NCBI RefSeq assembly: GCF_016432865.1 | Contig: NC_067398.1 | Coordinates: 137,702,001 to 137,766,000, forward strand | DNA from: Antechinus flavipes | Taxonomy: Eukaryota | DNA: 64,000 bases | Direction of reading: 5' to 3' | In this document: positions 6,701 to 29,400 of the stretch, one piece after another | Position numbering within the stretch: position 1 is the first letter of the stretch | Layout: every line of letters begins with the position of its first letter | Notes under the pieces: generated by a model | What the model was told of the DNA's origin: nothing | The model's database searches: none | The model's input: only the letters and a program-made list of their open reading frames with translations | Made by a program: the position numbers and the translations under genes

Positions 6701-9140
6701 CTGACCTCACAGGGCTATTGGGAGAAGCAAATGTGTCAATGTATGTAAAGCACTTTGTAAGTCTTGAATTGCTATGTAAATATCAGCTATTACTTGTAAG
6801 CAAGCAGGGAAGAGAAGATAGTGCGAACAAGCTCCTTTGAGGCTGTCATCATTTTTGTACTCTAAGCATCTGATACATTATAAATGCTTAATAAACATTA
6901 ACCGAATTGAGTTTATTGAAATTGTTGTTTAGTCATAATTTAGCTATGTCTGACTCTTCATAACTCCTTTAGGGGCTTTCTTGGCAAAATCATTAGAGAG
7001 TTTACCATCCTCCAGCTCATTTTATAGGTGAGGAAATTGAGAGAAACAGAGTAGAGTGACTTGCCCAGGGCCACACAACTAATAAGTGCCTGAGCCAGAT
7101 TTATACTCGTACAGGTGAATCTTCCTGACTCCAGGACTGGCACTCTATTCACCGTACCATCTGGTTGCCTCCAAATTACTGAACTGAACACACTTTAACC
7201 AAAATAACTTTTGATTTCCTTACCTTAACTGACGTAGAATGATGGAAGACTTTTAGTGGTTGACAGGATTTGCCCACACCAGGATCATAGGACCATATAT
7301 TCAATAGTCCATCAGTACAACCACTGGAAAGCAGCTTACCACTTGGTGACCACTTCAGGGCACATATAGCTCGCTTATGGCCAAGTGTTCCAATGTGATG
7401 CTGAGCTACTCGAACATCATAATGATGAATACGGCCCAATCTTGAACCACTATGTAGGAGAAAAGAAGCATGGTGGACCATTGTTTCTCAAGTTATATTC
7501 AACTATATACCCTATACAAGAATTCTGAAACCATCAGGAAAATACTGAGAAGGGAATTCCTGTAAATCATTAATAAAATTATCCAAAGATCCCTAGAATG
7601 GTCTTTAGCAAGAATAGATGCTACTGACTCCTTGTAGTAGCCAAAAAAAAAAAAAAAAACAGGAAATGGTTAGAAAACTTTATTATTTGAATATATTCAG
7701 TGGTTTTTAATTCATTGATATTTTTGTATTTTTAGTTGTATTCATAAATTATTGATTTATTCTTTCTCTTTTTTGTTAATAAAAGTTCCCCCTAAGAACT
7801 ACTTTGATTATATTGCCAAACTTTAGAACATTTTCTCATTTATGTCATTATCTTAAATGAAATTTTCTATTGCTTCTGTAATTTCTTCATTGATCCAATT
7901 ATTTTTTGGGATTGCTATTTAGTATCTCATTGATTTTTAATACTTTTAAACAACTTCTTTAATATGATTTTGTTGCATTATATTTAGTAAAGGATGTATA
8001 TAAGATTTATGCTTTTCTGCATTTGTGCCCTGCATATGTGTGAGACAAGATACCATGAACAGCTGCTATATGTATGTATGTTTACTCCTATTTCCATTCA
8101 AAAAATTGCTAAAGGTTAATCATATCTAATTTTTTCCAAAATTCTTCCTTCTAATTCATTTTTTTTAGTTTAGATTTATCTAGGGGTAATAGGAGTAAAC
8201 TAGGGCATCCTGTCATTATGTTAGCCTTATTGTTAGATGGACATATGTAAAGAATTAAAATAAATTCATAGTGTAATAAAGAATATAATTAAATATTATT
8301 GTGCAGCAAAAAGTGATGATTATGAGGAATTAAGAGATTTATATATACATTAGTAGAGAGAAAAATAAAAAGAAGCTAAAGAACAATATACACAGTGAGT
8401 AAAATGATATAAATTTTTAAATCACTTAAAACAAACTCTAAATTGAACTATGACTAACGGAAGAAAAAATGAAGATCCCAAAGAAAACTAATAAAGTATA
8501 TATTCTCCCTCTTAGCAGAGAGATAAGGAAGTACTAGGATAAAATTTTGCAACTATTGTCAAATATAGAATCTATAACAGATAGCCCTTGTAAAAAGGAA
8601 TGATTCAGTCGGGAAGATGGTTGGAAATGAATGTCACATAAACATAATAGGCATTAATGAAACATTATATTTTTTAAAATAATAGATGCGCTTGGTCACT
8701 TCTGATCCATTTGGAAATCCTTTGAATAATTAGGAGTGAAACTTCTGCCTGAAATTTCCTTTTCAGAGATAAACTGATTTATGTGACAGAACTAAAAATT
8801 CTAGGTTGAAAAATAAAACAATGTTCTATAAATCACCATGGACCACCATGGTGGTTCCATAAACCACCTACTAATAATCACATGATATCCAGTAGAAATA
8901 CCAACTAGTGTATATAGAAGAAAAGCCCACTACAGAAAATTTTTATTTGGAAAGAGTTCTACATTTAAACAACATAATCCTGAATATTGAGCTCACAGGT
9001 TTAAAGAGTAACATTTACAGAAAGCACATGACATTTTCTATAACGGAATACCTGAAGATATAAAAATACAATGATTTTTGGCCCGTCAATCTTTTTTTTA
9101 AATTGATCAGTTGTCCTGCCCCACTATTCAATTACAACTC

Positions 9141-9194
<54 letters not shown>

Positions 9195-12100
9195 TGCATG
9201 ACATCTAAACATCATTGACTCCAACAATGGATTTCTCACCTGCTGAGGACACAGTGATTCCAGCTCAAAGCCCCAACTACTGAAATATGACCAACCATAT
9301 TTCTCAGCCTTTTTTTAGTCATGACATCCCATAACTGGGGTTAGAAAAGAAATAAATAGGATTATAATTACATCAGTGTTCTACAATCCTAATTCAGTCT
9401 CTGCAGGGCTGACTATTAATGGGTCAGTTAATTTTGAAGAGGCTGGTGTGTTTTTGGCTGATGGTCAATGACATCATTAATCCTTAACCACAAGGCTCTG
9501 TGACTATTATTAAGGGAATTAGTAAACTTGTAGCTCCAGCTGCAGTTTGTCTACAAGCAGAATGTAAAAGTCAATTGGTCTCTTCCATGTTCTCCATAGA
9601 AAGTCAAATACTTGTTTCTTTTATAGCTAAGGTCTCCCAGCCAGGAATGTTGTTTCACATAACAAGTGAAACTTTTAATGTTGTGCAATTCTTCCTTGCA
9701 TAAAATATAGGGCATATGAAGAAAACTTAACCCATATCTAGGGGAGGAAAGAAGAAAAAGAAAGTGAGGGGAGATAAGAACAAAAGGGATTTTAAAAAAT
9801 CCTTCAGGAAAGAATTTTAGTGTCATCTCTCCTTAATACACAGTAGCCTAGTCTTTCTCCTATTCAAGAGTTTACATTTCACATTAACCAATGAAAAAGA
9901 GCTTTGAAAGATGTAAAAATTATTGGTCCAACCTGACCTAAAGAGTATATAAGAATAAAACATCCAATACTTGTACTTCTCCCTCACTGGTGCCAATGGC
10001 CAGGTAACCTCCCTCCTTTGTCCAGGAAATTGAGGAGATGTAGTTGCAATAGGGGCTCAAGTCTATGCTTCCCATTCCATCATGGCTTTCACCATTCCAG
10101 ATGTGTACAGCAGACCCAAGGGCAAGAGCAAGAAGACCTTCAGAATTCCAGTCTAGGATGTTTAGATCTGGAAGGAAAGAAGGAGGAATTACGGAACAAA
10201 GAAAGTTAGATGAGAAGGAGGGAAAAAAGGAGAGAGGAAGGGGAAGGAAGGAGGGAAGGAAGGAAGGAAGGAAGGAAAGTAGGAAGGAAAGAAAGAAGGA
10301 AGGAAGAGAAGAAGGGACGGAGGGAGGAAGGTACTTCCTCTTAACCCTACAAAAAGTTGAACTAAACAGCTACCTCAGTCTTTGAAAGGCTGGGACCTGG
10401 ACAATGAATCTATGCTGTTCAGATTCAAAATCATGTCAAGACATAGCAATTTAAGGAAGAAGTTTGTTAGCATAGTGGTTAGAGCATTGGACCATTTTAG
10501 AAAATTATTCACTTAACCACTGTCTGCCCAAGAATTCTCATTCTATAATAATTGTTGTCAGATAAATATTGCATATATATATTTTAAAAGCAAGCAAAGG
10601 TCTTCAGAGTGACTTGATACCCAAAGGCGGTTTTGTTCATTCTTTTTCCCTATAGGAACCTAAGAGAAAAATAAAAAGACCAATATAAATTTTTTTTAAT
10701 CTGCAAATGCTTCTATGAAGAAAAACAATGTTTATCAAAAATCTCATTAAAAAGCATTAAAAATTTCATTAAATTATTTTGTCTCAAATTTGTTAATAAC
10801 TGCCATTGTTTTTCATTTTTCGTTTCTTTACTTTTTTTAACCCAATGTCCTTTGCGCTTTGCTGTTAATGATCTTTCATTTTGAGTTTGAATGACCTTTA
10901 AAGCAAAACACAGATCAAAATGAGTAGAGATGGCACTGGGTGAAATGGGAGATCTTGGCCTTTTAAAATCTAGGTCTTCAACAGGTTTTACTTTGACTGA
11001 GGTTCCAGTCTTCTTGATCTATATTTGGCCACCGGACCCAGAAGGCTCTGGAGGGGAAAGTGAGGCAGGTGACCTTGCCTAGCCCTTTCTATTTCACTTG
11101 CATCTCATCACATCCCCTCCTTGATATCATAGTCCTTGAGAATGAAGAACAAAACAAAAACGTGTATATATGTGGTTTATTTGATTTATTATTATGGTTA
11201 GCACTTTTATAGTGATTTAAGTTTTGCAAAATATCTTATAGCATTCTTGGAGATTATTATGTCCATTTTACAGATTAGGAGACTGAGACCATTTAACAGC
11301 CTATAGCCATAACAACAGGAAATTTTCTAAAATGACAGTATCTAAAAAATCCCTTTAAAAGGTAAATGAGAGCAGCTGAATAGTGCAGTGGATAGAGTGC
11401 CAGCCTTAAAGTCAGGAGGACCTGAGTTCAAATATGATCTCAGACACTTAACACTTCCTACCCTGGGCAAGTCACTTAACCCCAATTGCCTCAGGGGGAA
11501 AAAAAAGTAGACAAATATTTTCTTCCTCATTAAAACAAAAAATTTAAATTGTTAAAAATCTGCCATAAATAGTAAAAAAAAAAAAAAAAAAACAGTGTCT
11601 TCATTAACAGATATTTCAACACACATGTTTCTCTCCCCCACCCCCACCTAAATAATTCTGCACCATTAGTTTTCTCTTTAGATAGCTTTACCTTGACTCT
11701 ATGTAGAGTCTAGACAACCCAGATTCATTGCCTATGTCCCAACTTCCCAAAGTCCCCACAATCACAGCATTATCCTATACTCTGGATCCCTAGCAGGCCA
11801 GTTGCTAGCCCACTACTTGATCGTTCACTATTTTGTCAGCTCTGGCCAATTCAAAAGGTGAATTAAATGTTTTCAAAGGCGAGAANNNNNNNNNNNNNNN
11901 NNNNNNNNNNNNNNNNNNNNNNNNNNNNNNNNNNNNNNNNNNNNNNNNNNNNNNNNNNNNNNNNNNNNNNNNNNNNNNNNNNNNNNNNNNNNNNNNNNNN
12001 NNNNNNNNNNNNNNNNNNNNNNNNNNNNNNNTAGAGAGAGACAGAGAGAATGAGACAGAGAGACAGAAAGAAATGGAAAGACTGAGGGAGAAGGGGAGAC

Positions 12101-15100
12101 ATGTTTTGACAAATTATTATTTTCTTTAAATCCCTAAATCTATATTGGTAAATATAAACGTAACCATTACACTAAAACTCTCCTGGGGGAACAAAGCCCT
12201 ACTTTGTGAATGCTTTTCATAAAGCATTCAATAAATGTTGGTTGATTGATAATTTGAGAAGCAAGAGATAGAAGGGGCAGCGAGAGGGCAAAATGGATAG
12301 AGCATGGGCCCTGGAGTCAGGAGGACCTTTCACACATTCCCAGCTGTGTGACCCTGGGCAAGTCACTTACCCCAACTACCTCACCCAAGAAAGAGAGAAA
12401 AAAAAGAGAGAAAGAGACAGAGAGGCACATGGAGACAACTAGGCAAGGAGAGAAACAGAAACAAAGAGACATATGCAGAAAGAGACAGGGGAAAAGTACT
12501 AGTCCCGTTCCCCCAGATCAGCATTTAGAAACAGGGGAACTCTATATGAATCATTTTTTAACTTGGTGCCATTTTGGAAACTGGTGGGCCAAAGACTAAG
12601 TTACTTTTCCGGGCTTCAAGGGGCCAGAGGCCGGGAGAGAAAAAAAGGACTCCACCCTCCTCAGCCAAAGAGTCGCCGTGTCCGCCCCCAGAGTGCCGCT
12701 GCCCGCTTCTAGCTTTCAGTTAACCTGCTGGAAGGAGACAGGGACCAAAGCTCACAGTAGTCATCCCGCAGGCCCGTGAGATGCATCTTCCGCTCCGGCT
12801 GCGGCGCGAGGCGCTTCCTGTCCCCGGGCCGCTGAGGAGGCGCCGAAGCCTCTCCCGGACTTCCATCCCCGCAGCCTGCAAAGAAGGAGTCAGCCAGGAG
12901 CACATCCTGCACCCCACTCTGGTCCTGCGAACTTTCCTCATGGGGATAAAAAAAGGGCTGCAGACGCAGGGAGCGTGAGTCTCAGGGAAGAGAGAGGGGG
13001 AAAGGGTAGAGAGCAAGAGCAACTGAAATCAGAGGCGTTATTATTTTTAGCAATAAAAAGACATTTTCTGATTTAAAGGATATACCTGTGGGGCAGTGCT
13101 CATTGCTAGGCGGTGAGCTCCTTAAGGACAGAAACTGTCTTTTGCCTTTCTTTACATCCCTAGATTTAGGGCCCAGCACGTGGTAAGAATTCTATAATAA
13201 ATACTTAATTGAGTCCCAGTTTGCCTGACTGACACATGCAGATTATAACTTAGGATAAAAAGGTTTAGGGAGTTGCCTGAGGAACAGAAATGGAAATTGT
13301 GCTGTCCACAGAGATAGTGTGAGAGGCAAGATTTGAACTCAGATCTTTTTTATTCTAGATTTTTGATTGATTGATTTGATTCCAAAACTTTATTCATACA
13401 GCCTCAAAATAAACAAAAACGTACATACTGTGTGTCCAGAGATGTAAAATATAAGCAATATCACTGGAAAAGAACCTGCTTTGACTGTTTACTGTTTTAT
13501 TTGAATCTATAAATCCACAATGATCGTTGCATATTAATATCAGCAGCATGCTGAAATTCACCTGGGAAAGTGAAACCCTACCTGGTGAAAACTTTTCACA
13601 AAGGATTTAATAAATATTTGTTGACTGATTGATTGATTGATACAGTTCTATGCTTCATTATCTCTGTATCAAAGCATCTGGAGACCAGTTCATTTTGCCT
13701 ATGAGAGTCAACACATAGAATACTAATTCTTTCTACTTTCAGGATATAGTCTTTTTTTTTATAATAACTTTTTATTGACAGAATCCATGCCAGGGTAATT
13801 TTTTTTACAACATTATCCCTTGCACTCGCTTCTGTTCCGATTTTTCCCCTCTCTCCCTCCACTCCCTCCCCTAGATGGCAAGCAGTCCTATATATGTTAA
13901 ATATGTTGCAGTATATCCTAGATACAATATATGTGTGCAGAACCAAACAGTTCTCTTGTTGCACAGGAAGAATTGGATTCAGAAGGTAGAAATAATCCGG
14001 GAAAAAAAACAAAAATGCAAGCAGTTTATATTCATTTCCCAGTGTTCTTTCTTTGGATGTAGCTACTTCTATCCATCATTTATCAATTGAAACTCAGGTC
14101 TCTTTGTCAAAGATATCCACTTCCATCAGAATACATCCTCATACAATATCATTGTTGAAGTGTATAATGATCTCCTGGTTCTGCTCATTTCACTTAGCAT
14201 CAGTTCATGTAAGTCTCTCCAAGCCTCTCTGTATTCATCCTGCTGGTCAGTTCATAAAGAACAATAATATTCCATAACATTCATATGCCACAATTTACCC
14301 AACTATTCTCCAATTGATGGGCATCCATTCATTTTCCAGCTTCTAGCCACTACAAACAGGGCTGCCACAAACATTTTGGCACATACAGGTCCCTTTCCCT
14401 TTTTTAGTATTTCTTTGGGGTGTAAGCCCAGTAGAAACACTGCTGGATCAAAGGGTATGCACAGTTTGATAACTTTTTGGGCATAATTCCAGATTGCTCT
14501 CCAGAATGGTTGGATTCGTTCACAACTCCACCAACAATGCATCAATGTCCCAGTTTTCCCGCATCCCCTCCAACATTCATCATTATTTTTTTCTGTCATC
14601 TTAGCCAATCTGACAGGTGTGTAGTGGTATCTCAGAGTTGTCTTAATTTGCATTTCTCTGATCAATAATGATTTGGAACACTCTTTCATATGAGTGGTAA
14701 TGGTTTCAATTTCATCATCTGAAAATTGTCTGTTCATATCCTTTGACCATTTATCAATTGGAGAATGGCTTGATTTCTTATAAATTAGAGTCAGTTCTCT
14801 ATATATTTTGGAAATGAGGCCTTTATCAGAACCTTTAACTGTGAAGATGTTTCCCCAGTTTGTTGCTTCCCTTCTAATCTTGTTTGCATTAGTTTTGTTT
14901 GTACAAAGGCTTTTTAATTTGATGTAATCAAAATTTTCTATTTTGTGTTCAGTAATGGTCTGTAGTTCATCTTTGGTCACAAATTTCTTTCTCCTCCACA
15001 AGTCTGAGAGATAAACTATCCTATGTTCCTCTAATTTATTTATAATCTCGTTCTTTATGCCTAGGTCATGGACCCATTTTGATCTTATCTTGGTATATGG

Positions 15101-18100
15101 TGTTAAGTGTGGGTCCATGCCTAATTTCTGCCATATTAATTTCCAGTTATCCCAGCAGTTTTTATCAAATAATGAATTCTTATCCCAAAAGTTAGGATCT
15201 TTGGGTTTGTCAAACACTAGATCGCTATAGTTGACTATTCTGTCTTGTGAACCTAACCTTTTCCATTGATCAACTAATCTATTTCTTAGCCAATACCAAA
15301 TGGTTTTGGTGACTGCTGCTTTATAATATAATTTTAGATCAGGTACAGCTAGGCCACCTTCATTTGATTTTTTTTTCATTAATTCCCTTGAGATTCTCGA
15401 CTTTTTATTGTTCCATATGAATTTTGTTGTTATTTTTTCTAGATCATTAAAATATTTTCTTGGAAGTCTGATTGGCATAGCACTAAATAAATAGATTAGT
15501 TTAGGGAGTATTGTCATCTTTATTATATTCGCTTGGCCTATCCAAGAGCACTAAATATTTTTCCAATAATTTAAGCCTGACTTTATTTGTGTGGAAACTT
15601 TTTTATAATTTTGCACATATAATTCCTGACTTTCCTTTGGTAGATAGATTCCCAAATATTTTATATCAACAGTTATTCTGAATGGAATTTCTCTTTGTAT
15701 CTCTTGCTGTTGGATTTTGTTGGTGATGTATAAAAATGCTGAGGATTTATGGGGATTTATTTTGTATCCTGCTACTTTGCTAAAATTATGAATTATTTCT
15801 AATAGGTTTTTAGTAGAATCTCTGGGGTTCTCTAGGTATACCATCATATCATCTGCAAAGAGTGATAGTTTGGTTTCCTCATTGCCTACTCTAATTCCTT
15901 TAATCTCTTTCTCGACTCTTATTACAGAGGCTAGTGTTTCTAATACAATATTGAATAATAATGGTGATAGTGAGCAACCTTGCTTCACTCCAGATCTTAC
16001 TGGGAAAGGTTCCAGTTTTTCCCCATTGCATATGATACTTACTGAAGGTTTTAAATATATGCTCCTGACTATTTTAAGGAAAAGTCCATTTATTCCTATG
16101 CTCTCAAGTGTTTTTATTAGGAATGGATGTTGGATTTTATCAAATGCTTTTTCTGCATCTATTGAGATGATCATATGGTTTTTGTTTGTTTAGTTATTGA
16201 TATAGTCAATTATGCTAATAGTTTTCCTAATATTGAACCAGCCCTGCATTCCTGGTATAAATCCTACTTGTCATAGTGTATTATCCTGGGGATGATTTTC
16301 TGTAATCTTTTTGCTAATATTTTATTTAAGATTTTAGCATCAATATTCATTAGGGAGATTGGTCTATAATTTTTTTTCTCTATTTTCAACCTACCTGGTT
16401 TAGGTATCAGTACCATGTCTGTGTCATAAAAGGAGTTTGGTAGGACTCCTTCAACCCCTATTTTTTCAAATAGTTTATTTAGCATTGGAGTTAATTGTTC
16501 TTTAAATGTTTGGTAGAATTCACATGTAAATCCATCTGGTAGTGGGGATTTTTTCTTAGGGAGTTGGTTGATAGTTTGTTCTATTTCTTTTTCTGAAATG
16601 GGACTGTTTAAGATATTTACTTCTTCCTCTGTTAGTTTGGGCAAGCTATATTTTTGGAAGTATTCTTCTATTTCATTTAAATTGTCGAATTTATTGGCAT
16701 AAAGTTGGGCAAAGTAACTCCTAATTATTGCTCTAATTTCCTCTTCGTTAGTGGCAAGTTCTCTCTTTTCATTTTTAAGACTAACAATTTGATTTTCCTC
16801 TTTCCTTTTTTTAATCAGATTTACTAAGGGTTTGTCTATTTTGTTGGTTTTTTCATAGAACCAACTCTTAGTTTTATTAATTAATTCAATAGTTTTTTTA
16901 CTTTCAATTTTATTGATTTCTCCTTTTATTTTTAGAATTTCAAGTTTAGTGTTTGACTGTTTTTAATTTGTTTCTTTTCTAGCATTTTTAGTTGCAAGCC
17001 CAATTCATTGACCTTCTCTTTCTCTATTTTATGCAAATAGGCCTCTAGAGATATGAAATTTCCCCTTATTACCGCTTTGGCTGCATCCCACACATTTTGG
17101 TATGATGTCTCATTATTATCGTTTTCTTGGGTGAAGTTATTAATTATGTATATGATTTGCTGTTTCACCCAATCTTTCTTTAGTATGAGATTATTTGGTT
17201 TCCAATTATTTTTTGGTCTACTTTCCCCTGGCTTTTTGTTGAATGTAATTTTCATTGCATCGTGGTCTGAAAAGGATACATTTACTATTTCTGCCTTACT
17301 GCATTTGAGTTTGAGGTTTTTATGTCCTAATATATGGTCAGTTTTTGTATAGGTTCCATGAACTGCTGAAAAGAAAGTATACTTCTTTCTGTCTCCAAGA
17401 TATAGTCTTTAAAATGTTGTCAGCATCAAGTTCTGATCAAAAGGCCCTTCCCTCCCAAAGGCAAAACCCACAGGACAGTGGCTTCCGATTCTCTACCTTC
17501 TGCACAGGATGAGCAACGTAATAAACACAGGGGTCCTGTGGTAGAGTGGCTAAAGACACAGCTAAGATGATACCACAAATGAGACCCTGAAAGGTGTAGC
17601 AAGAAACTACCTTACCACATGTAAGAAGCCATCTCTGTCAGCCTGAGAAATGTGTAGTCATGTACCGAATACCGTGGGACAGCCAGAAACCTACTGTTCT
17701 GTTCATGGACCATTACCGAGAAGACCAAAGGAAATTAATTATCAGCATTCCTAGAAGCCTTCTCTGCTCTCAGTCAAATCCACTACAAATCATGCAAATT
17801 CCTTTTGTTAAACTGGAACACTCAAACTTAGTCCAGGTTTCTAAAGAGTGGGACTGAGTGATTAGAATCAGGGTTCTTAACTCTCTCTGTGTATATATGT
17901 GTCATAAATCCTTTTGACAGACTGGTGAAACCTAAGGACTCTTCAAAATAATATTTCTAAATAATTGAAGTTATGGTAACTTAGATTAGGTTAGAGGTCA
18001 GTGAAAATAAAGCTGTGATTTTTCCCATCCAAGTGCAAGAACCCCAAGAAACTTAGGGGTGTAATCCCCAGGTTAAGAACTCCTGTATTAAAACCATGGA

Positions 18101-21100
18101 AGAGAATTCCAGCAAGATTTTTTTTTACTTATTTGGAAGCAAAGAAACCATCTTTTTTTTTCCCAAAAATGTTGGCTTTTTGCTGTGTAGATTGCAGACT
18201 CTGAAGCCAAGGGACCAGGGTAGGGTTAATAGGATCTTTATGAGGTAATCAAATGTGGGCCGCAGCTGCAGACTTAGATATCCTCAGGCCAGATGTATCT
18301 TTGTGCCAAAAATCCCCTAAAATATCAAAATGCAGACACAGGATAGGGCCCTCCTTGCCTCAACCTGCTACATAATTTTTGGACCAAAATCAAGTATTTA
18401 AAATCTTACTAAAACACAAACTTGTTGCTGGTCACATCAAAAGAGAAGGTAGAGGAGACATTTTCTCTCTTCTTTTCACCCACTCATTTCCCCAAAGTCC
18501 AGTATGTTTGTTCTTAACCATAGAGTCATGCTAAAAGCAGAGATCTCAAAAGTCCAGCCCTGGCTTTCCCCATTTTCCTGACTTTACATTTATACATCCA
18601 TCCAAAAGAATATATAGAATGTCTGAAGCTTATGTCTCCATTCTCATGTATAGATGGTTATCCTTCTTGTTCCCATCTGGTATCTGGAAAAACTGAGGAA
18701 GGGAGAATGAATGATTGCATAAAAGTCTCTAGAAGAAGGCCACAGAGTAGAATTACAATTTAGAATTCAGAGCTTTTGACTTCAATCAATTCTGAGCATA
18801 TTTAATGGTGACCCTTCCAAAACAACCTAGACACTTATTCCAGAAGGAAATCTATCTGGCATCTTTCCTAGACATTCAGGAAAGGAATAGCTAGTTCTCC
18901 CAATGTGTTTCCATCCAAAGACAAGGTTGCTCACTGACCATCTCTCCCAGACATGAGTCCCTTCTATGAAATCTCTGGTGGAACCTCATGTGGTGTGAAG
19001 GACCAATCTGACATGGCTATAGCTTCCAGATTTCCCAACTGCAAGTAAGCTCTGGGCTCAAAAGACAAACTAAAAGTCACAAGGATGCTCCAGAGGTCTC
19101 AAGGCTCAGCCCCTGGGAAGCAGCAATGCTGCCTTTCTGTGAGTAATCTCTAGGGCAGAACTCTGAGAAGTTGCTGAGACTTAGCTACTCTGTCAGTTGA
19201 GAGATCATTACTAGAATGCAATAGAATTACTAGAATGACCTCTGGGTCTTGTGAAAAAAAGTGCTTTTTTCTTTTCCTATAGTTTTAACTACTAACAACT
19301 AGCCCTAGATCTGAAAAAAGTCTTAGACTTCTTTATTTTACAGCTAAAGAGAGAGACTGACTTCCACTGAAATTTTGCATAAGGCTTAAAGTTTCTAATT
19401 ATGACTCAGCCCCTTTGTCATCCTTATGCCATATCAAGCATGTTTAGGGAGAGCCCCCCTGCTCCATGCATCTGCACTCGCAAAACCTTATTCTCTTGTA
19501 CACTTAAGAAAGATATTTTAGACCTCAGAAATTCTGGAAGATAGTTATCAGTAGAGAATAAGAAATTTCAGAACAAAGTAGTTGATAGGTGGATCAGTGA
19601 TCCAGATATTAAGAAAGTTCCTGGCTATGTATTTGTATGTTTATGTATATGATGATAACATATAGTACATTATTCATTCATGTAACAAAAATTCACTAAA
19701 CATCTATTCTGTACTAAGTTAATTGCTATGAATATGAAAATAAAACTTTTTTCTCAAAAAAAAAAAAGAGAATGCAATTTTCTGTGTTCATGGTACCTTC
19801 ACTTCAATAGATTCCTCTCCTCTAGACGTACTAGTCAGGAGTGAGGATAATGTTAAGTAAAAAAGACAAAAGAAAAAGAAAAACGAAGGAAAAAGGACTA
19901 AGATTACAGATCTGGATCTAGAAGGAACTTGAAATTATCCAGTCCATTATGAGGAAACTGAGATATTGCATTTAGGTCCTCTGACTTTCCATTTTTTCCT
20001 CAAAAGAAAAGAATTCCCACAATTTGACAGAAAGAAGCTTCTTTAGGTCTTCCCCGCATTTTTCTTTTGTTTTTTGCATTTTTACATCTCTTTCCAATAC
20101 ATACCTTTCCAAAAGCAGTTGGGTCTCTCACAGGTCTGCATCTCCCCACTGATGTTCCAGAGCCCCTTTGGGCAGGAAAGCAACAGGGTGGAACACTTCT
20201 AAAAGTAAACAGAAGCAAAGGAAGGCTAGACAAGTTTCAAACTGAATAAAAAGTAAGGGCTACTATGGTTATCTCTCTAAAAAAAATTCAAATTCAGATA
20301 GGAAAAACTGCCTTTGATTTAGAAGCCGACACAGCTTCATAGGCAAATATCATGTTGAAAATCAATCAATAAGCATTTATGAAGCATTTATGAAATGCCA
20401 GGCACTGGGCAAAACTCCAAGGATACAAAGAAGGGCAAAAGATAATGCCTGACCTCAAGGAGGTTGCAATCTAACGGAGTAGCAGATTGACAATAAACTG
20501 CGGGCAGAACAAGTTTTGGACGGGATAAATGAGAGGTTATCCAGGGAGGGAAGGTACTAACTAGCATGAAAAGGCTTCTTTCAGGAGGTGGGGCTTTTAC
20601 TGAGATGTTAAGGAGCCTGGAGCCTGGAGAACATTGAGGAGAGAGAACATTCTTAGAGTAAGAATGCAGAGGCTGGAGGAGCCAGGAGACCCGGAATAGC
20701 AAAGAGAAATCACTGGATTTCAGAGGAAGCAGTGAGGAAGACAGAGACTTAGATATAAGATTGGATAGATAGGAAGGGGTAGGTTACTAAGGGGGTGTAA
20801 AAGCCAAACAAAAGGTTTTGTTTTTAATTTGATCCTAGAAGTAATAAAGAGTCATTGGAGTTTATTGAATTTGTACTTTTGAAAGATGATTTTGAAAGCC
20901 CAGTGGAAAATGGACTGAGGCAGGGAAAGGCTGGAAGCAGGGAGACCAACCAGCAGTCTCTAGCGTTTTGTTGTTGCTCTTCAGTCACTTCAGTCACATC
21001 CAAGTCTCTGTATTCCCATTTGAGTAGCCATTTCCTTCTCCAGATCATTTTACAGATGAGGAAACTGAGGCAAACAGAGTTAAGGGATTTGTTCAGAGTC

Positions 21101-23359
21101 TCACAGCCAGTATGCCTCTGAGGCTGATGCGAACTCAGGCTCTAACAGTCCAAGCACAAAGTGATGAGAGACCTGCTCCAAAGTGGTGAATATCATATTT
21201 CAACTCCTGTAGCACTGGGGAAGCTCATTTTCTGCACAAGGACCAGGATTAGAAATACAAAGGGTATAAGGAAACATGTTCTGCTCTCAGAGCTCAACAT
21301 GTAATCAAACAAGTACAGTTAAAGTAATTTAAAGAAAGTTTATATCTGTGTAATGAATCGCCCGTGATGGTACCTGAAAAGTGCCCGGAGGCAAGCATTC
21401 CAGGAGGCAGAAGGGAGAATGGGAGGGGTATTCTAGACATGTGTGAGACCATGGAGTTGGATGGCTTTGTCTGCTCCATCTCTATTCTAGCCTCACTGGC
21501 CTGCTAGACCTTTCTTGGCTCCTTGTATCAGGTCTTAACAAACTGCTCAAGTGAGCTGGTTTGCGCTGGATCCAGCCAATCCAAGCTATCATAAGACATG
21601 ATGCCAGGAGCCAAGAAAGGTCCAGCAGGCCAGTGGGACTAGAATAGAGATGGAGCAGAGCAAAGCCATCCAAGGACCACGGGCCACTTATGGGCCTCAA
21701 TGCTGAGGTGACCAGGCTTTGGGTTGATTGAAAGTTCTTAGGTCCTGGTGAAGAAACTTCAATTTTTTTCTTCATTTCTCCCTCTTTTACTTTAACTTTA
21801 CCTCCCCCTCTTTTCTTTACATCTCCCTCTTTTCCTTCACCTCTCTCTCTTTTCTTTCACCTTCCCCTCTTTTCTTTTACCTCTTTCTCTTTTCCTTCAC
21901 CTCCCCCTCTTTTCCCTCACCTCTCCCTTTTTTCCTTCACTTCTTCCTCTTTTCCCTCACCTCCTCTTTTCCTTCACCTCTCCCTCTTTTCCTTCACCTC
22001 TCTCTCTTTTCCTTTACCTCTCCAGCACACACATCATAGAACTAGAAATGTACTGGATCCAGCTCAAACCAGCTCACTTGAGCAGTTTGTTAAATTTTTA
22101 ATGTGAGTATTTACACCTCAGAAATCAGCAAAGGCTACAAATGAAGGCTTGCTTTGTTGTTCTGTTGATTGTTTCAGTTTAAAAAAGTGATGAAGAAAAT
22201 ATTAATAATGCAGATTCAGTTGAAAAGTGTGTCCTGCGTGCTTTTGGGGGGATGGGAAGGGAAGCTTGTTGTTAAACATTTAAAAGCATACCATTGCATG
22301 GAACTAGCTGTTAGGACCCCTATTACATATTACATATGAAGAAAAGACTGGAATAGTAGATGGAAGGTTCTTAATTGCCAAAGAAATCCTTTTTATTTCT
22401 GAGAGTCTATGAATGGGGAATGAGGCTTGTAAAATTATTTTCAGGGGTAAGAGACCTGAACCAAACTTAATTTTTAATGTAGCTAGATATTTTGGGACAA
22501 CTAGGTGGTTGAGCTTGAAGTGAAGAAGGCCTGAGTTCAAATACTGTCTCATACATTTACTACTGACATTAGAGAAGTCACTTAATCTCAGTTTGCTTTA
22601 ATCCACTGTAGAAGGAACTAGCAAACCATTCCAGCAAGAAAACCCTTGGGTAGTATGGGCTATCAGGTCACAGAAAATCAGATATGATTGAATGGACTGA
22701 AAAACAAATTTTTGTCTCCCTGGTAATAGTGGGATATACAGACATTTTTGTACTTTTCACTTCTGGTCTGCTAGTGTCTTTTCTGACCCTGAAACCACTT
22801 CTTTTTAGTTGCTTACATCAGAGAAGACCTGGGGCAGAAAGATGCTTTGTGATGTCCATCATGCTGAATCTCTATGTTATTTACTGGGCTGTGTCGTGGC
22901 AAACATTCATGTATGCTTTTTCTTGGGCATTCAAAGTTTTCCCAATGTATCTATAAATCCCTAAGGTTCATGAAGATAACTCTTGGCCAGCTGTTCAGGG
23001 TTGCTCTAACCAGCTATTTATTTCACAATCCTGTTTCTTCTGACTCCCGTGAGAACCACAAAAGTGTCTAAACTACTGCGGAATAAAATGCATTTCTTCC
23101 TTCTACATCCCTCCTAGACATTTTATTCATGGCTTAAATGAATCCATTTAAGAGAGCAATTTGGCAGAGAGCTAATCAGATTGCTAGAATTTTCAGACTC
23201 CAAAGTAAGTACAGACTCTTATGTGGAAAATCTAGTAGGAGACACCAGGAAACAACCTTTTAGGACCAGAGAAAGACCACACACGTGTTCACAAAAATCT
23301 AGAAGAGACATTTTTCTGGATCTTTATCATTCCTTCCTGCTCCACATGTCCAAGTTCAG

Positions 23360-23407
<48 letters not shown>

Positions 23408-26400
23408 ATACAGTTTAGCACAAACTCCATCAGCAACTTCACGTCCTTTTATCCAGTAGAACGGAAGTTTCCTGGGACGAGATTGTTTTTAACTTGCATC
23501 CCATGCTTTGCTCATAGTAGGCATTTAATGCCTTTTGAATGGAGCTAGCCCGCAGAGGCTCCATCAATGGTGTTGGAAGAAGAGCAGAGGGGGATGAGTA
23601 AGGGCTGTTAGTGCTATGGTACCAAGAAGCACCCACACCCCACCAATGTTGGAGCCCAACCATTATTTCCTTTGTTGTTACCATTATCTTTGTTCTCTTA
23701 TAGTGGAGTTAATGAGGAAGCCCAGAGCAGTGGAGCTGTCAATGGTCTATTCTTTTGCAGAAAATATGACTAAGAATATTAAGATAAGCCAGCAGTGCCC
23801 CCTTAGGCAGCATGGTGTAATGCAAGCATTGAACTGAGTGTTAGAAAAGCTGGCAAATAAATATTCATTAAGCACCCATGTCCCAGGCATTGGGGAAGCA
23901 AAGATTTCTTTTTAAATCTTCCACTGGGTTATAGAGGTGGGGATACAACTTTTACACAGATAATTATAATACAAAACCAGAGATGGTAAAAATCTAAATA
24001 ACAAACTATTAAGAATTTTGAAAAGGAAGAATGCTTTCAGACAGGGGAACCACAAATGGTGAGCCTTGGGGAAAGAGAAATTTGAAAGGCAAAAAGAGAC
24101 ATGAAGGAGTACCTCCTAAGTACCTGCTTAGTCATAGCTCCATCACTCACAAATTTATGTGAGCTTCCACCTCAGTTTCTTCATCTCCAAAGTAAGGACA
24201 TTGCACTAAATTATCTTTTGAGGTTCCTTCCATTACTAAACATCCTATGTTATTTTGATCACCAAAAAAATAAAAATAAAAAAAAAACCCAAAACCTGAG
24301 ATGGATGAAACTTGCAACATAGGAATTGATTTAGGATACTGATATTTTCTTGAGTGATTTCAAACTATTCACATCTATTTTCAGATGATTTCATTCATTC
24401 ATTCAGATGATTTACAAGAATGCTTATCCTAAAGTAAGAATGGAACGTACCTCTAAATTTCTAATTTCAGGCTTTTGTCTAACTTTAAAATTATCATTTA
24501 CCCTACTTAGTCTCTGTTTTGAAAATGAAACATCAAGGGTGGTCATTTTATTCACATTAAGATTATGATCAAGTTTTGATGCTTCGATGCAATGTATTAA
24601 CAGCTCCCTGTAAGAGGTCCCCAAAGTGTCAAGTCTGGTGGCAAGAACTGAATGAGACTATATCCTGCCCACAGCACGTCTTATTTTCATTATTTATACC
24701 TCACATTTGTAAAATGCTTTGAAAGTAGCAATCACAATTCTCAGAAATTGGAGCCAATCCTCTGTAGTGTGCACATCACAGAACTTAGACACATCTCCAT
24801 TAATTCCCCAAGATCAAATAGCAGCATCTATTTCTTCTTCCCTCCTCCCAGGGCCTTAATCCAATGAGCCTCAATATCCACAGGGCTACCTGTCTTTTCA
24901 AGTCAACATTCTTCTGCCAGTTTCTTTGCTCGATGGTTGGCACTTCCCAGAACCTTGAAGCAGCAGCCTTTCTTCCCAAGTGTGCTACCCCACAGGTCTT
25001 CCAAGATTGATCACTGGGGGATCCTGAAAACAAGATTTGATTTTTATTGGCAAACCAGAAAAGTGAGGGGGGCAAGAGCTCCAAAAACCTACCCAGGGCA
25101 GCCATCTAACAATGAAAAAAGTAAAGAGAGAAGTTCTAAACCAGGGGAACATGGGCCTGTTTTTTAAAAATATTTTGTTAGCTGCATTTCAGTGTAATTA
25201 AGAGGGGGAACATGGCTTTACCATATTGTGAAAGGTATCTAGGACATTAAAAAAAGAGTAAAGAATTCTTAACTCTAATACATTGACTAGCTTTCCTATT
25301 GGGGGATTTATGGAAAGATAGATTAGGGATAATTCAGAATATGGATGAGCTATAATCTACCTAGATGGAGAATATGTCCATCCTGAGGAGGTCAGTAATC
25401 ATTCAAATCTAGAATAATATATATGAAATAATGCTTTCCAAGTTAGAGTAGTATATAAATCAAGTGTTTTAAATGCAGTTATTGTTTATTTTCTTTTTTC
25501 TTTCAAAATTGGTAAAATATTATTTCTCTTCCTAAATATTTCATTACACTCAAAGAATTATACAACTCTAAATCCTGACTTGTTATCAAATCTAATAAAA
25601 ATGTTCCTTAAATGCCTATAAACACAAGAAGTATGAATAAGCTTATCATTGGGCCTTAACCTCCATTATTACATGGGATTTGTTTATATTATATTATCAC
25701 TGGGATTCTGGAATCTCTGGGGTCACTTGACATTTTTTCCAAATTCATAATAGCTGTTTGGCAGTAATTACTTATGCAAATCATAACCCAAGTTCCCATT
25801 TCATATTATATCCTCTACTAAGAGACCATCTGATAGTCTTACTCTTAAGGATTGAGGAGCTCCAGGGAGAAAAAAACCTGCAACCCCTCAAAGCAGTTCA
25901 TTCTGCAATTGGATAGCTCAGATTGTTGGGAAGTTTTTCTGACATCAAACCTAAAGATGCCTCATTGTCTTCCCACTCCTACTCTACTCTCCCTTATCCT
26001 GTGTTAAACTTAATAGCTACTTGCTTTAGCCCATCTTCATTTATCATGCAGTCATTCTGGTTGTCCTCCTCTGGATACTTTCCTATTTATCATTATCTTT
26101 GTTAAGTCATGGTTCTCAAAACTGAATATAGTACTTAAGATGAAGTTTGATGAGGATAGAATATTGTTCCCCTACATATTCCTGGAAGCTACAATACAGT
26201 GGCTAGGTATATAGTAAAACTATTGCTCAATCCTTTATGTCTGTATCCTTCTTTAAGGCAGCCTTCTGGGAACTTTATCCTAAGACAAATATTGTAATGG
26301 AAAATATGGACATCCTAATTTGGAATAAAACGTTTTGCAAGGGTAAATGCTGAAAACTACCTTTGCATATGTTTTGAAAATAAAAAGCTATTATTTAAAA

Positions 26401-29400
26401 ATATAAAAATGAAATAAAAATCATTATGATATGTAATTTTATTAATTTTTAAAACTTTTAATTTTTGTCTTTTAAGCTGAGATCCATAACAAACTCTGGG
26501 CAACCTTGGCTTTGACCCAGGAAGCCTACTTTCAGTAAAGGTATATTTTCTGAAAACATTGGTCTTCCACTCCTGCAGCCTCTCCTTCTCTTCCTTGCCT
26601 GGGCTAACATCCCAAGAATACCACTGTGGTCATACCCCTCTCCCGGCACCCATCTTCTTCTACAGCCATGCCATCATTACTGTAATTATCAGAACAAATT
26701 GTCCATGTCATGCTGCCAGGCCCTTGCCATGTGGGATGCCAGAGACTAGTATCTGCTGGAAGTGTGAGGATGATCTAGATTCCTAACAGCAGAGTTGTCT
26801 CTGTGTGTATCTCTGTGTATCTGTGTGTCTCTGTCTCTGCGTCTTTTCTCTGTCTCTTTCTTTTTCTCTCTCTCTTTCTCTTATTCTGCCTCTCTTCTCT
26901 CTGTCTCTATCTCTTCCTGCCCTTTTCCTTCCTCTCACTCTCTCTTTCTCTCCTTCTCCTTTTTATCTTCTTCCCTAGATTGCAATGTACATCTCCAAAA
27001 AAAATTTGTTCCTTCCCACTCTCTTGACTGGTTCTAATCTTTTTGAGGATAGGATGGTGGCCCAGGGTCCCCTAGCTAAGTACTTCCTGCTCCTGAACTA
27101 TCTTCCCTCCTGTGGGGCTCATGATAGACAGGAACAACTTGAATTCTAACTCAGTCATGGTGTATAGAACCTTCCAGTTACTTTCTTCCCTTTCCCTATC
27201 CCAAGAAATTATAAATAAACTAGAAATTACAGATACTTTATTATTCCAACATCAGTAATTTTCTTCAGCCACCTAGGACCAGCAAATTAACCTCTTATTA
27301 GAGGTTTATAATACAATAAAATAAAACTAATTTCAAAACAAATTGAAAGCATCTCTTTTAAAATAATTTATAAAATAGTAAATTATAAGAAATTAGATAT
27401 CAAACTAAGTCTAAGAGAAGTTTTCAAAACAAATTATATTCTACTTGCATACTAGGCTGAAGTTTTTATTTATTATTTTTATTGTTTATTTACTTATTTG
27501 AAATTAACTACATATTTTGTTATATAATTATATGTAATTGAATTTATATTTATAGTATATGTGATAATATATAATTATATATAAGTAATTGTTTTTTATT
27601 ATTTTTATTTTGGAAGAAAAAGAGAAATCCAGATAGGTAAAGACAAAATAAACACATCTGGGTAGAACAGAAATAGCATAAATGTGGAGGGAGAGAGACT
27701 TAAAATGTAACAAAAAAGTAAATTTAATTAAAAAAAAACAAAACATCATTAAATTTAGAGCCACAAGACATGGCTTAATAAAATTAGGAGGTCTATATAG
27801 GTCCTCTGGTTCACTATTTCCCATTTTACAGATAAGGAAATTTGGACCCATCTAAATCAAGAGCCTTATCCAAGGTCACACAAGGTCGAAAGTAACAAGA
27901 TACCCCTTCTTTTAAATAATGTTTAAATCATCCCTAATACTTTATTCTTACTAAGAATCATCGTTTCTTCCTCCTGTGTTCTCTCCAGCTCTGATCCAGA
28001 AGCATCCGTCTCATCAAGAGAATGGTCCTCCCCAAAAAGGTGAGCAGCACAATTTCCAGTGGAGACTTGCTGCCCTCTCGTGGTAATTGGGCTACTGGCA
28101 ACAGGCATTTCAGTGGTCTGTCTCTTCATGATGTTATTTTTAAAGTTAGAATATGGAGTATCAATTGGATTCAGCGCCTGTTTATTAAACAACATAACCA
28201 CAAGGAGTTGTGACCTATGATTGCCAAAAATAAGTAAAAAAATAGAATGTTTTCTAAAAGAAGGCTCAGTATGTCTGAAACAAAATAAATTAATTGGTCC
28301 TAAATGACCAGAATTCAAAAACACCTCATAGACCTAAGTTTAAATTGTATGAAGCTCAACAAGTTTTTCTTTAGCCACAATTCTCCCAAACTCTTTTACC
28401 ATACATCCTGAAAGGATTCTGTTCCCTTGCAAGGGACACAAAGTATTCAAGGAGCAACTTTTCATGGTCATTAAACCCAACATGTGTTGGGTTATTATTT
28501 TATATTTATTGAGAATACCTGTTGTACTGAAAATACATGTTCTTTACATAACAGTAGTAACAAATGATAATAAAAATGTGGAAATGTAGAAATTACTGCA
28601 TTGCCATGAACTTCTGGAAATAATAGTTTGGGTCACATAAATTAGACAGAAATTATGGCAAAGAATAGGAAAAAATAGGCAAAGAAAGGGAAAAGTAGGA
28701 GGTCCACAGATATTACACGTTGCTTTGGGACTTTTTGAATATGTTCATCAGCTATAGTGACTTTTCCCCCTTTCTAAAGAAATATTATTTGTCATATAGA
28801 TTCTATGAGAGAGGGGGGGAAATAACTACAGTAATGTAAAAAATGCCAATAAGTGGCATAGGGGATAGAATGCCATGCCTGGAGTCAGAAAGACTCCTTT
28901 TCCTGAGATCAAGCCTAGCTTACTAGTTGTGTGATCCTGGGCAAATCATTTAATCCTGTTTGCCTTAGTTTCCTCATCTGTAAAATGGGCTAGAGAAATA
29001 GCAAACCACTCCAGTATCTCTGCCAAGAAAAGCCCACATGAAAAGTCAAAAATGCCTGAAACAACTGAATAACAGTAAAAGAAAATGATATAGGATGAGG
29101 GTAAATTTTTTTGGTGTTATCAATGAATTTCATGGCAAATACCATATATCTATTGAAATAAAATCCACGTTCCATACCCTAATGCTGCTGTCACTGCCTC
29201 TATCTGTTGCCCTAAAGATGACTGAAGGGTCCAAGAGATCAATAAATAAAGACTCAAGGACTTTGAGGAGAGTTGAGGAAATTGACCCTTGTTTGCTTTT
29301 TTCTTGCTCACTGAGGAGATTATCTTCAAAGTGGAAAGGTTTTTTTTTTTTTTTTAATCAAGAAATAAATGAAATCCCAAACCATATAGGGAATAACTGG

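What the first reader, a model, noticed from the sequence alone, without database searches (positions are those of the whole stretch)
21457..21673. 81-bp near-perfect fold-back hairpin in CDC20B intron 4, not explained by any element I recognise
Seen: the left arm ttggatggctttg-tctgctcc...atcaggtctta (21457-21537) and the right arm (21592-21673) are reverse complements at 75/82 positions around a 54-nt loop. The arm is non-repetitive, mixed-composition sequence with no SINE/LINE/MITE signature I recognise. Established: intronic dsRNA stems this long can be substrates for ADAR, Drosha or Dicer, and in DNA can extrude cruciforms. Inference: this is a lineage-specific hairpin/endo-siRNA or young miRNA source co-transcribed with the miR-449 host gene, or an editing substrate; a neutral inverted duplication is equally possible.
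Basis: partly seen in the sequence, partly recalled or inferred. Interest (0 to 1): 0.72.

Follow-up and report, generated by a model that had tools for sequence, protein, structure and literature searches.

The report
Template-switch hairpin in CDC20B intron
A real 81-bp fold-back in an intron of the miR-449 host gene is best read as a scar of DNA copying that jumped between templates; this is a known kind of mutation, and nothing here shows that it has a function.

Summary
The inverted repeat is real. Arms 21457-21537 and 21592-21673 match at 75/82 around a 54-nt spacer. Both strands fold at about -166 and -172 kcal/mol, z about -18.

The left part of the loop (21535-21575) is a 40/41 reverse-complement copy of 22053-22093, which lies beyond a 20-bp pyrimidine-rich satellite. 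The 119-nt block 21457-21575 is therefore two reverse-complement copies of downstream segments. They are joined at a 3-nt TTA overlap, with sharp ends and no target-site duplication. These are the only two high-identity inverted repeats in the 64 kb, and no other copy of either segment occurs in the window.

I read this as a two-piece templated insertion from replication template switching, roughly 10 My old (wide error).

Arm differences show no pairing-preserving bias. The stem pair has diverged at least as much as the non-stem pair.

The stem is far longer than a canonical pri-miRNA stem, and no Rfam family reaches its threshold.

The hairpin lies inside the CDC20B transcription unit; the intron number is unverified.

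Scan notes list similar template-switch hairpins elsewhere in this genome.

The parts
21457..21537 (.). Left arm (A). Inferred to be the derived copy, a reverse complement of 21592-21673.
   Evidence: 75/82 in the alignment; pair I1. The outer end is sharp: flank extension scores no better than shuffles, p 0.24.
21535..21575 (.). Left part of the loop (B), a reverse-complement copy of 22053-22093. It ends in the self-complementary 10-mer CTGGATCCAG.
   Evidence: 40/41 identity: pair I2. Homology does not extend past either end.
21535..21537 (.). TTA shared by the end of the A homology and the start of the B homology. This is the microhomology at the joint between the two templated pieces.
   Evidence: Read directly: the A homology ends at 21537 and the B homology begins at 21535.
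21576..21591 (.). 16-nt remainder of the spacer. Inferred to be ancestral sequence lying between the insertion and the right arm.
   Evidence: Its similarity to B is not above shuffles, p about 0.2.
21592..21673 (.). Right arm (A'). Inferred to be the original sequence and first template.
   Evidence: The polarity is inferred by parsimony, not shown.
21796..22023 (.). 20-bp tandem repeat of 11.6 copies, about 95% pyrimidine on the + strand. It lies between the two template segments and may have acted as a replication barrier (speculative).
   Evidence: TRF result; family D1.
22053..22093 (.). B'. Inferred to be the original sequence and second template.
   Evidence: Pair I2 at 98%.

Best explanation
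The hairpin is a by-product of one complex replication error, a template switch of the FoSTeS/MMBIR or 'TSM' type.

Proposed sequence of events (inferred):
1. A nascent strand that had reached about 21456 left its template.
2. It copied the opposite strand backwards over 21673-21592.
3. It jumped at a TTA microhomology to copy 22093-22053.
4. It returned to its own template at 21576.

The outcome is a 119-nt insertion (21457-21575). Its first 81 nt pair with the original 21592-21673. Its last 41 nt sit in the loop and match a site about 480 bp downstream.

The event is not young: arm divergence is about 6-7%, which puts it in the order of 10 My with wide error.

The structure has since drifted neutrally. 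Because it lies in a CDC20B intron, the host pre-mRNA (minus strand) should carry an 81-bp dsRNA stem. I infer that its default fate is passive ADAR editing and intron turnover, not regulated small-RNA production.

Shown: the repeat anatomy, the junction, uniqueness within the window, the fold and the genic location. Inferred: which copy is the original, the mechanism, the age and the neutrality.
For: - The 119-nt block equals revcomp(21592-21673) at 75/82 plus revcomp(22053-22093) at 40/41, overlapping by TTA.
- All four homology ends are sharp. Flank and spacer similarities are not above shuffles: p 0.24, 0.66, 0.20, 0.96, 0.12.
- These two abutting pairs are the only high-identity inverted repeats in the 64 kb, so they belong to one history.
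- Parsimony on polarity: one insertion built from two nearby templates explains why the two homologies share a boundary. The reverse polarity needs two separate insertions whose source boundaries happen to coincide, or an extra unknown template for 21674-22052.
- No other copy of the arms or of the sources occurs in the window, even at word size 7. No target-site duplication is visible in the flanks.
- Neutrality: there are 4 transitions, 2 transversions and 1 indel. Each RNA strand gets 2 G:U, 2 A:C and 2 non-pairs. The stem pair differs at 6/81 against 1/41 for the non-stem pair, Fisher p 0.42.
- The mechanism is documented. Template switches create whole hairpins in one step, inverted fragments of up to 83 bases and multi-switch cases are reported, and such hairpins are enriched in introns (PMC10710096).
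Against:
- Genome-wide copy number of the arm is untested; only 64 kb was searched.
- The microhomologies are short: TTA at the joint and AG at the outer ends.
- 81 nt plus 41 nt is at the long end of the template-switch events described in the cited paper.
- Neutrality rests on 7 differences, which gives very low power.
- Gene conversion between the arms could distort the age estimate.
Confidence: 0.6

Rival explanations
1. Two-step history. First, a larger near-perfect palindrome of about 2 x 115 bp formed, centred on GGATCC at 21568-21573. Its centre was then revised by an asymmetric deletion on the right side, as happens to unstable palindromes. Separately, B or B' was copied by a later short template switch or by gene conversion.
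For: - The global alignment of the two halves resumes weakly inside the spacer, after a 12-nt gap in a gapped alignment (16 nt set against 4 nt by my reading of it).
- The repeat finder lists a 20-nt palindrome at 75% about the GGATCC centre (pair I4).
- B/B' is nominally younger than A/A': 1/41 against 6/81 differences.
Against: - The inner similarity is not above shuffles, p about 0.2.
- The difference in divergence is not significant, p 0.42.
- This history needs two or three events where one suffices.
- It does not explain why the B homology starts exactly where the A homology stops.
Confidence: 0.15
2. The arms are terminal inverted repeats of a MITE or DNA transposon, or a fragment of some other dispersed marsupial repeat, possibly rearranged.
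For: - Long inverted repeats with an internal satellite are common in non-autonomous DNA transposons.
- B and B' are each bounded on the outside by TTAA (pair I2).
- Genome-wide copy number could not be tested.
Against: - No second copy of any part occurs in 64 kb, even with a sensitive search.
- No target-site duplication flanks 21457/21673.
- A TTAA-bounded element at 21535-22093 would have to contain an inverted copy of its own left flank, which a simple insertion does not give.
- The one metagenome match to a 21-mer of the arm is a chance hit without extension. A blank there says little either way.
Confidence: 0.12
3. The hairpin is a selected RNA element: a source of endo-siRNA or of a young miRNA co-expressed with miR-449, or a regulated ADAR target that affects CDC20B or miR-449 processing.
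For: - It lies on the transcribed strand's unit, about 32 kb downstream of mir-449.
- The stem is very stable on the sense (minus) strand and persists in a larger context.
- Template-switch hairpins in introns have given rise to real miRNAs (PMC10710096).
Against: - The 81-bp stem and 54-nt loop do not match the roughly 35-bp stem preferred by Microprocessor (PMC10710096).
- Rfam matches reach only 30-47 bits against thresholds of 77-97, and only for models of perfect-palindrome miRNAs.
- There is no pairing-preserving bias, and the stem is conserved no better than the non-stem control pair.
- No RNA run holds the stretch on record. That is a weak negative.
Confidence: 0.08
4. The hairpin is an assembly artefact, for example a fold-back chimera from long reads.
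For: Palindromic chimeras are a known artefact of long-read and amplified libraries (my own knowledge, not tested here).
Against: - The arms differ at 7 of 82 positions and are separated by a structured 54-nt spacer. Artefactual fold-backs are near-perfect and usually much longer.
- Independent runs from several organisms hold 28-85% of the sampled words of 21400-22150, although the words could not be placed along the stretch.
Confidence: 0.03

Closest known systems
Template-switch mutations (TSMs) that create hairpins in one step (Loytynoja & Goldman four-point model; Monttinen, Frilander & Loytynoja 2023, PMC10710096)
   Same: A block is the reverse complement of nearby sequence and the source is left intact in cis. 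The result is an instant long stem, located in an intron of an expressed host gene. A multi-switch composition is mentioned in that paper as occurring.
   Different: The event here is longer than the examples quoted in that paper (28 nt and up to 83 bases, from a search threshold of 15 nt): 81 plus 41 nt in two pieces. The stem is much longer than a pre-miRNA. The event is not demonstrated here with an ancestral state.
FoSTeS/MMBIR templated insertions at structural-variant junctions
   Same: Several short templated pieces from within about 1 kb are joined at 2-3-nt microhomologies, in inverted orientation.
   Different: Those are mostly described at the breakpoints of large rearrangements in disease. 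Here there is only a small local insertion, fixed in the reference assembly of a wild species.
Long hairpin RNA (hpRNA) loci that give endo-siRNAs, and inverted-repeat ADAR substrates in introns
   Same: The transcript would carry a long, nearly perfect intramolecular dsRNA of more than 80 bp.
   Different: No small RNA or editing evidence exists for this locus. Most mammalian ADAR substrates come from paired SINEs, not from a unique-sequence duplication.
MITEs and fold-back transposons
   Same: An inverted repeat with an internal tandem repeat nearby.
   Different: No target-site duplication, no second copy in 64 kb, and an arrangement (A B c A' ... B') that a transposon insertion does not produce.

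Membership tests
Template-switch (TSM / FoSTeS-MMBIR) templated insertion | The inserted block is the reverse complement of nearby sequence, and that sequence remains in place. | tested here: met
   21457-21537 against 21592-21673 at 75/82; 21535-21575 against 22053-22093 at 40/41.
Template-switch (TSM / FoSTeS-MMBIR) templated insertion | Sharp homology ends with short microhomology at the switch points. | tested here: met
   TTA overlap at 21535-21537 and AG at both outer ends. Flank extensions are not above shuffles. The microhomologies are short, so this support is weak.
Template-switch (TSM / FoSTeS-MMBIR) templated insertion | The ancestral (outgroup) state lacks the block, so that one event explains the whole difference. 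| not testable with these tools
No marsupial genome collection is searchable here.
MITE / DNA transposon | Target-site duplication flanking the terminal inverted repeats. | tested here: not met
   The flanks of 21457 and 21673 share no direct repeat of 2-10 bp in register. At about 7% divergence a duplication should still be visible.
MITE / DNA transposon | Multiple dispersed copies in the genome. | tested here: inconclusive
   No other copy occurs in the 64 kb window. The whole genome is not searchable. The metagenome scan gave one chance hit.
Canonical animal miRNA precursor | A stem of about 35 bp with single-stranded basal flanks and an apical loop of 10 nt or more. | tested here: not met
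   The stem is 81 bp or more and continuous, with a 54-nt partly structured loop. The criterion is as stated in PMC10710096.
Canonical animal miRNA precursor | Membership of a described miRNA family. | tested here: not met
   The best Rfam scores are 47, 36.9 and 36.4 bits against gathering scores of 77, 80 and 97. All the matched models describe perfect palindromes.
Canonical animal miRNA precursor | Discrete 5p/3p small-RNA reads. | not testable with these tools
Intronic dsRNA substrate (ADAR / hpRNA) | A long near-perfect intramolecular duplex within a transcribed unit. | tested here: met
   The minus-strand fold is -171.9 kcal/mol, z -18.6. The locus lies between mir-449 and the CDC20-family exons on the minus strand.
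Intronic dsRNA substrate (ADAR / hpRNA) | Clustered A-to-G changes in RNA, or 21-23-nt products. | not testable with these tools
   No RNA data could be laid on the stretch.

The most novel reading that the evidence does not exclude
The two-piece template switch created, in one step, a lineage-specific long hairpin RNA inside the miR-449 host gene. This RNA is diced into endo-siRNAs, or trimmed into a young miRNA, in the testis or in multiciliated cells. That would add a dasyurid-specific small RNA to the CDC20B/miR-449 expression programme.
Probability: 0.06. Interest if true: 0.55.

Novelty: new member of a known kind. Interest (0 to 1): 0.24.

Why it matters
If the reading is right, the locus is a clean natural example of a multi-piece template switch. 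It built an 81-bp stem from unique sequence in one event, inside a gene that already hosts a conserved miRNA cluster.

Such events are the proposed raw material for de novo hairpin RNA genes. This one also carries an internal control: a co-created pair that is not part of the stem, which allows a test of whether the stem is under selection.

By itself the case is ordinary. The mechanism is published, the scan's own notes list several similar cases elsewhere in this genome, and nothing indicates a function.

Tried and rejected
There is therefore no cross-species, depth or joint evidence.
- An exact look-up of four ORFs overlapping the hairpin found none in the protein collection. I therefore did not spend the costly homology search on an ORF proxy for copy number.
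- A metagenome scan with a 21-mer shared by both arms gave one AT-rich contig with a 21-23-nt chance match and no extension.
- Findings look-ups by sequence and by relatives were blank, which means nothing.
- Extension of the palindrome outwards to about 21438/21694 and inwards across the spacer looked suggestive in a global alignment but is not above shuffles. I dropped it.
- A TTAA-bounded element at 21535-22093 (piggyBac-like or TA-type MITE) was considered and rejected. It would have to contain an inverted copy of its own left flank.
- The Rfam hits to MIR7725, mir-3160 and mir-3914 were rejected as structure-driven and below threshold.
- The tammar small-RNA paper lists a CDC20B hairpin with 554 reads (PMC3576234). 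Its roughly 35-bp stem and 8-nt loop do not fit this structure; it is probably a miR-449 member.

I did not intend this, and it returned nothing. 

Full report
**Observation**

Aligning 21457-21537 with the reverse complement of 21592-21673 gives 75 matches in 82 columns: six substitutions and one single-base indel. The repeat finder reports the ungapped core as 68 nt at 91%, with 54 nt between the arms.

As RNA, 21440-21690 folds at -165.8 kcal/mol on the + strand (z -17.6) and -171.9 kcal/mol on the - strand (z -18.6). None of 200 dinucleotide shuffles comes close. The stem is kept when 751 nt of context are folded. This is far beyond chance.

**Setting**

- Rfam finds mir-449 on the minus strand at 53574-53660.
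- Stop-free stretches on the minus strand at 4733-4900, 7179-7487, 9239-9340 and 9941-10369 carry WD40 sequence.
- The one I tested matches human CDC20 chains best, at E about 1e-24.

The hairpin therefore sits inside the CDC20B-type transcription unit, about 32 kb downstream of mir-449 and upstream of the WD40 exons. I did not verify the label 'intron 4'. Earlier notes of the scan name the genome as the yellow-footed antechinus; I did not check that.

The left 41 nt of the 'loop' (21535-21575) are a 40/41 reverse-complement copy of 22053-22093 (pair I2). That site lies 477 nt downstream, on the far side of a 20-bp tandem repeat (21796-22023, 11.6 copies, about 95% pyrimidine on the + strand).

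Across the whole 64 kb, with arms of 30 nt or more within 2 kb, only these two high-identity inverted pairs exist, and they abut. The A homology ends at 21537 and the B homology starts at 21535, so they share TTA.

The 119-nt block 21457-21575 can therefore be written as revcomp(21592-21673) followed by revcomp(22053-22093), joined at a 3-nt overlap. Both outer ends of the block are preceded or closed by AG.

**Are the ends sharp?**

A global alignment hinted that the palindrome might extend outwards to about 21438/21694, and inwards across the spacer. Tested against 5000 shuffles, none of these extensions holds:

| Comparison | p |
|---|---|
| Outer flanks, 30 nt | 0.24 |
| Outer flanks, 60 nt | 0.66 |
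| B against the remaining spacer | 0.20 |
| B/B' flank (end of A vs downstream of B') | 0.96 |
| B/B' flank (after B vs upstream of B') | 0.12 |

The homologies have sharp ends.

**Transposon or local event?**

- Neither the arms, nor B, nor the inferred source segments have another copy in the window. This holds at word size 9 or 7 with permissive E-values.
- No direct repeat flanks 21457/21673.
- A TTAA-bounded element at 21535-22093 would need to contain an inverted copy of its own left flank, which an insertion does not produce.
- A collection-wide scan of metagenome contigs with a 21-mer common to both arms returned one unrelated AT-rich contig. This is uninformative.

Genome-wide copy number could not be tested. 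That is the main gap in rejecting a repeat family.

**Mechanism (inferred)**

The arrangement A-B-c-A'...B' is what a replication template switch with two templated pieces gives:
1. A nascent strand stops near 21456.
2. It copies the other strand backwards over 21673-21592.
3. It moves at TTA to 22093-22053.
4. It returns at 21576.

The polarity is inferred by parsimony. One insertion from two nearby templates explains the shared boundary. The opposite polarity needs two insertions whose sources happen to abut, or an extra unknown template for 21674-22052.

The mechanism is published. Template switches create entire hairpins in one event, inverted fragments of up to 83 bases and multi-switch cases are reported, and such hairpins are enriched in introns (PMC10710096).

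The pyrimidine-rich satellite between the two templates may have been a fork barrier. That is speculation.

**Age and selection**

- The arms differ at 6/81 aligned sites (JC distance 0.078).
- B and B' differ at 1/41 (0.025).
- The two rates do not differ significantly (Fisher p 0.42), so a single event is compatible with the data.
- Pooled, 7/122 sites at assumed neutral rates of 1-3e-9 per site per year puts the event in the order of 10-30 My, with a wide Poisson error. This pooled calculation is my own arithmetic from the counts.

The four transitions give two G:U and two A:C pairs on either RNA strand, and the two transversions break pairing. There is no bias towards keeping the stem on either strand.

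If the event was single, B/B' serves as an internal control, because it is not part of the stem. The stem pair has changed at least as much as this control. Power is very low, but nothing points to selection for pairing.

**RNA-level reading**

On the sense (minus) strand, the host pre-mRNA would carry a continuous stem of about 81 bp with a 54-nt, partly structured loop.
- This does not fit the Microprocessor preference for a stem of about 35 bp (PMC10710096).
- Rfam at a permissive threshold gives only 30-47 bits against gathering scores of 77-97. The matched models are three perfect-palindrome miRNA families, on both strands. These matches are structural, not evidence of membership.
- From established knowledge of dsRNA pathways, a stem of this length in an intron is a generic ADAR substrate and, at best, a poor Dicer substrate in somatic mammalian cells. 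That is inference.
- The look-up of sequencing runs listed no RNA holder.
- The tammar small-RNA study lists a CDC20B hairpin with 554 reads. Its drawn structure (stem of about 35 bp, 8-nt loop) fits a miR-449-type precursor, not this element (PMC3576234).

**Limits**

- I therefore have no outgroup state, no depth and no RNA evidence.
- One search shows that runs of six coded organisms hold 0.85, 0.57, 0.51, 0.50, 0.28 and 0.06 of the sampled words of 21400-22150. This suggests orthologous sequence at graded divergence, but the words cannot be placed along the stretch.
Three things need stating. The findings look-up widened itself to 19900-23650 and so touched them; it returned nothing. I masked them in my own script.

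**Verdict**

The structure is best explained as a locus-specific, two-piece templated inverted insertion from template switching, moderately old and drifting neutrally. It has a predictable but unproven consequence: a long dsRNA stem in the CDC20B intron.

It is a new member of a known kind. The scan's own notes list several comparable template-switch hairpins elsewhere in this genome (I did not check them). One note (s1-196679) reads the B/B' pair of this same locus as a template-switch signature. I re-derived that reading here from the coordinates and the junction.

Noticed in passing
window 21796-22023 and about 26842-26969: A 20-bp tandem repeat of 11.6 copies at 81% matches, about 95% pyrimidine on the + strand. 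It therefore reads as a purine-rich tract in the CDC20B pre-mRNA. A related CT-rich array lies about 5 kb away (69-72% identity). It could form H-DNA; any link to the template switch is speculative.
   Followed up: partly
window 14306-15550, minus strand: A 415-aa stop-free stretch that looks by eye like the C-terminal part of a LINE-1 ORF2 protein. It lies within the same CDC20B intron region. I did not scan it against Pfam.
   Followed up: no
window 4733-4900, 7179-7487, 9239-9340, 9941-10369, 12712-12981, minus strand: CDC20-family coding exons: WD40 repeats, and an upstream exon ending in an LRDDY-type motif. The 7179-7487 stretch matches human CDC20 structures at E about 1e-24. Exon numbering was not established.
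   Followed up: partly
window 53574-53660, minus strand: Only one mir-449 hairpin passes Rfam's gathering score in the window (76 bits).
   Followed up: no
window 11886-12031: An assembly gap of 146 N inside the CDC20B region. I left it as it is.
   Followed up: no
window 11419-11448 / 13316-13345 and 22495-22560: SINE-like segments with a motif of the type GACCTGAGTTCAAAT, one pair in inverted orientation about 1.9 kb apart. These are ordinary marsupial SINE copies, unrelated to the hairpin arms.
   Followed up: no
window 21457-21673 with 22053-22093: In RNA, the A:A' and B:B' pairings would together form a pseudoknot: a 41-nt pairing partner locked inside the 54-nt loop of an 81-bp stem. Full formation seems sterically unlikely, and the minimum-free-energy fold keeps only A:A'.
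   Followed up: partly
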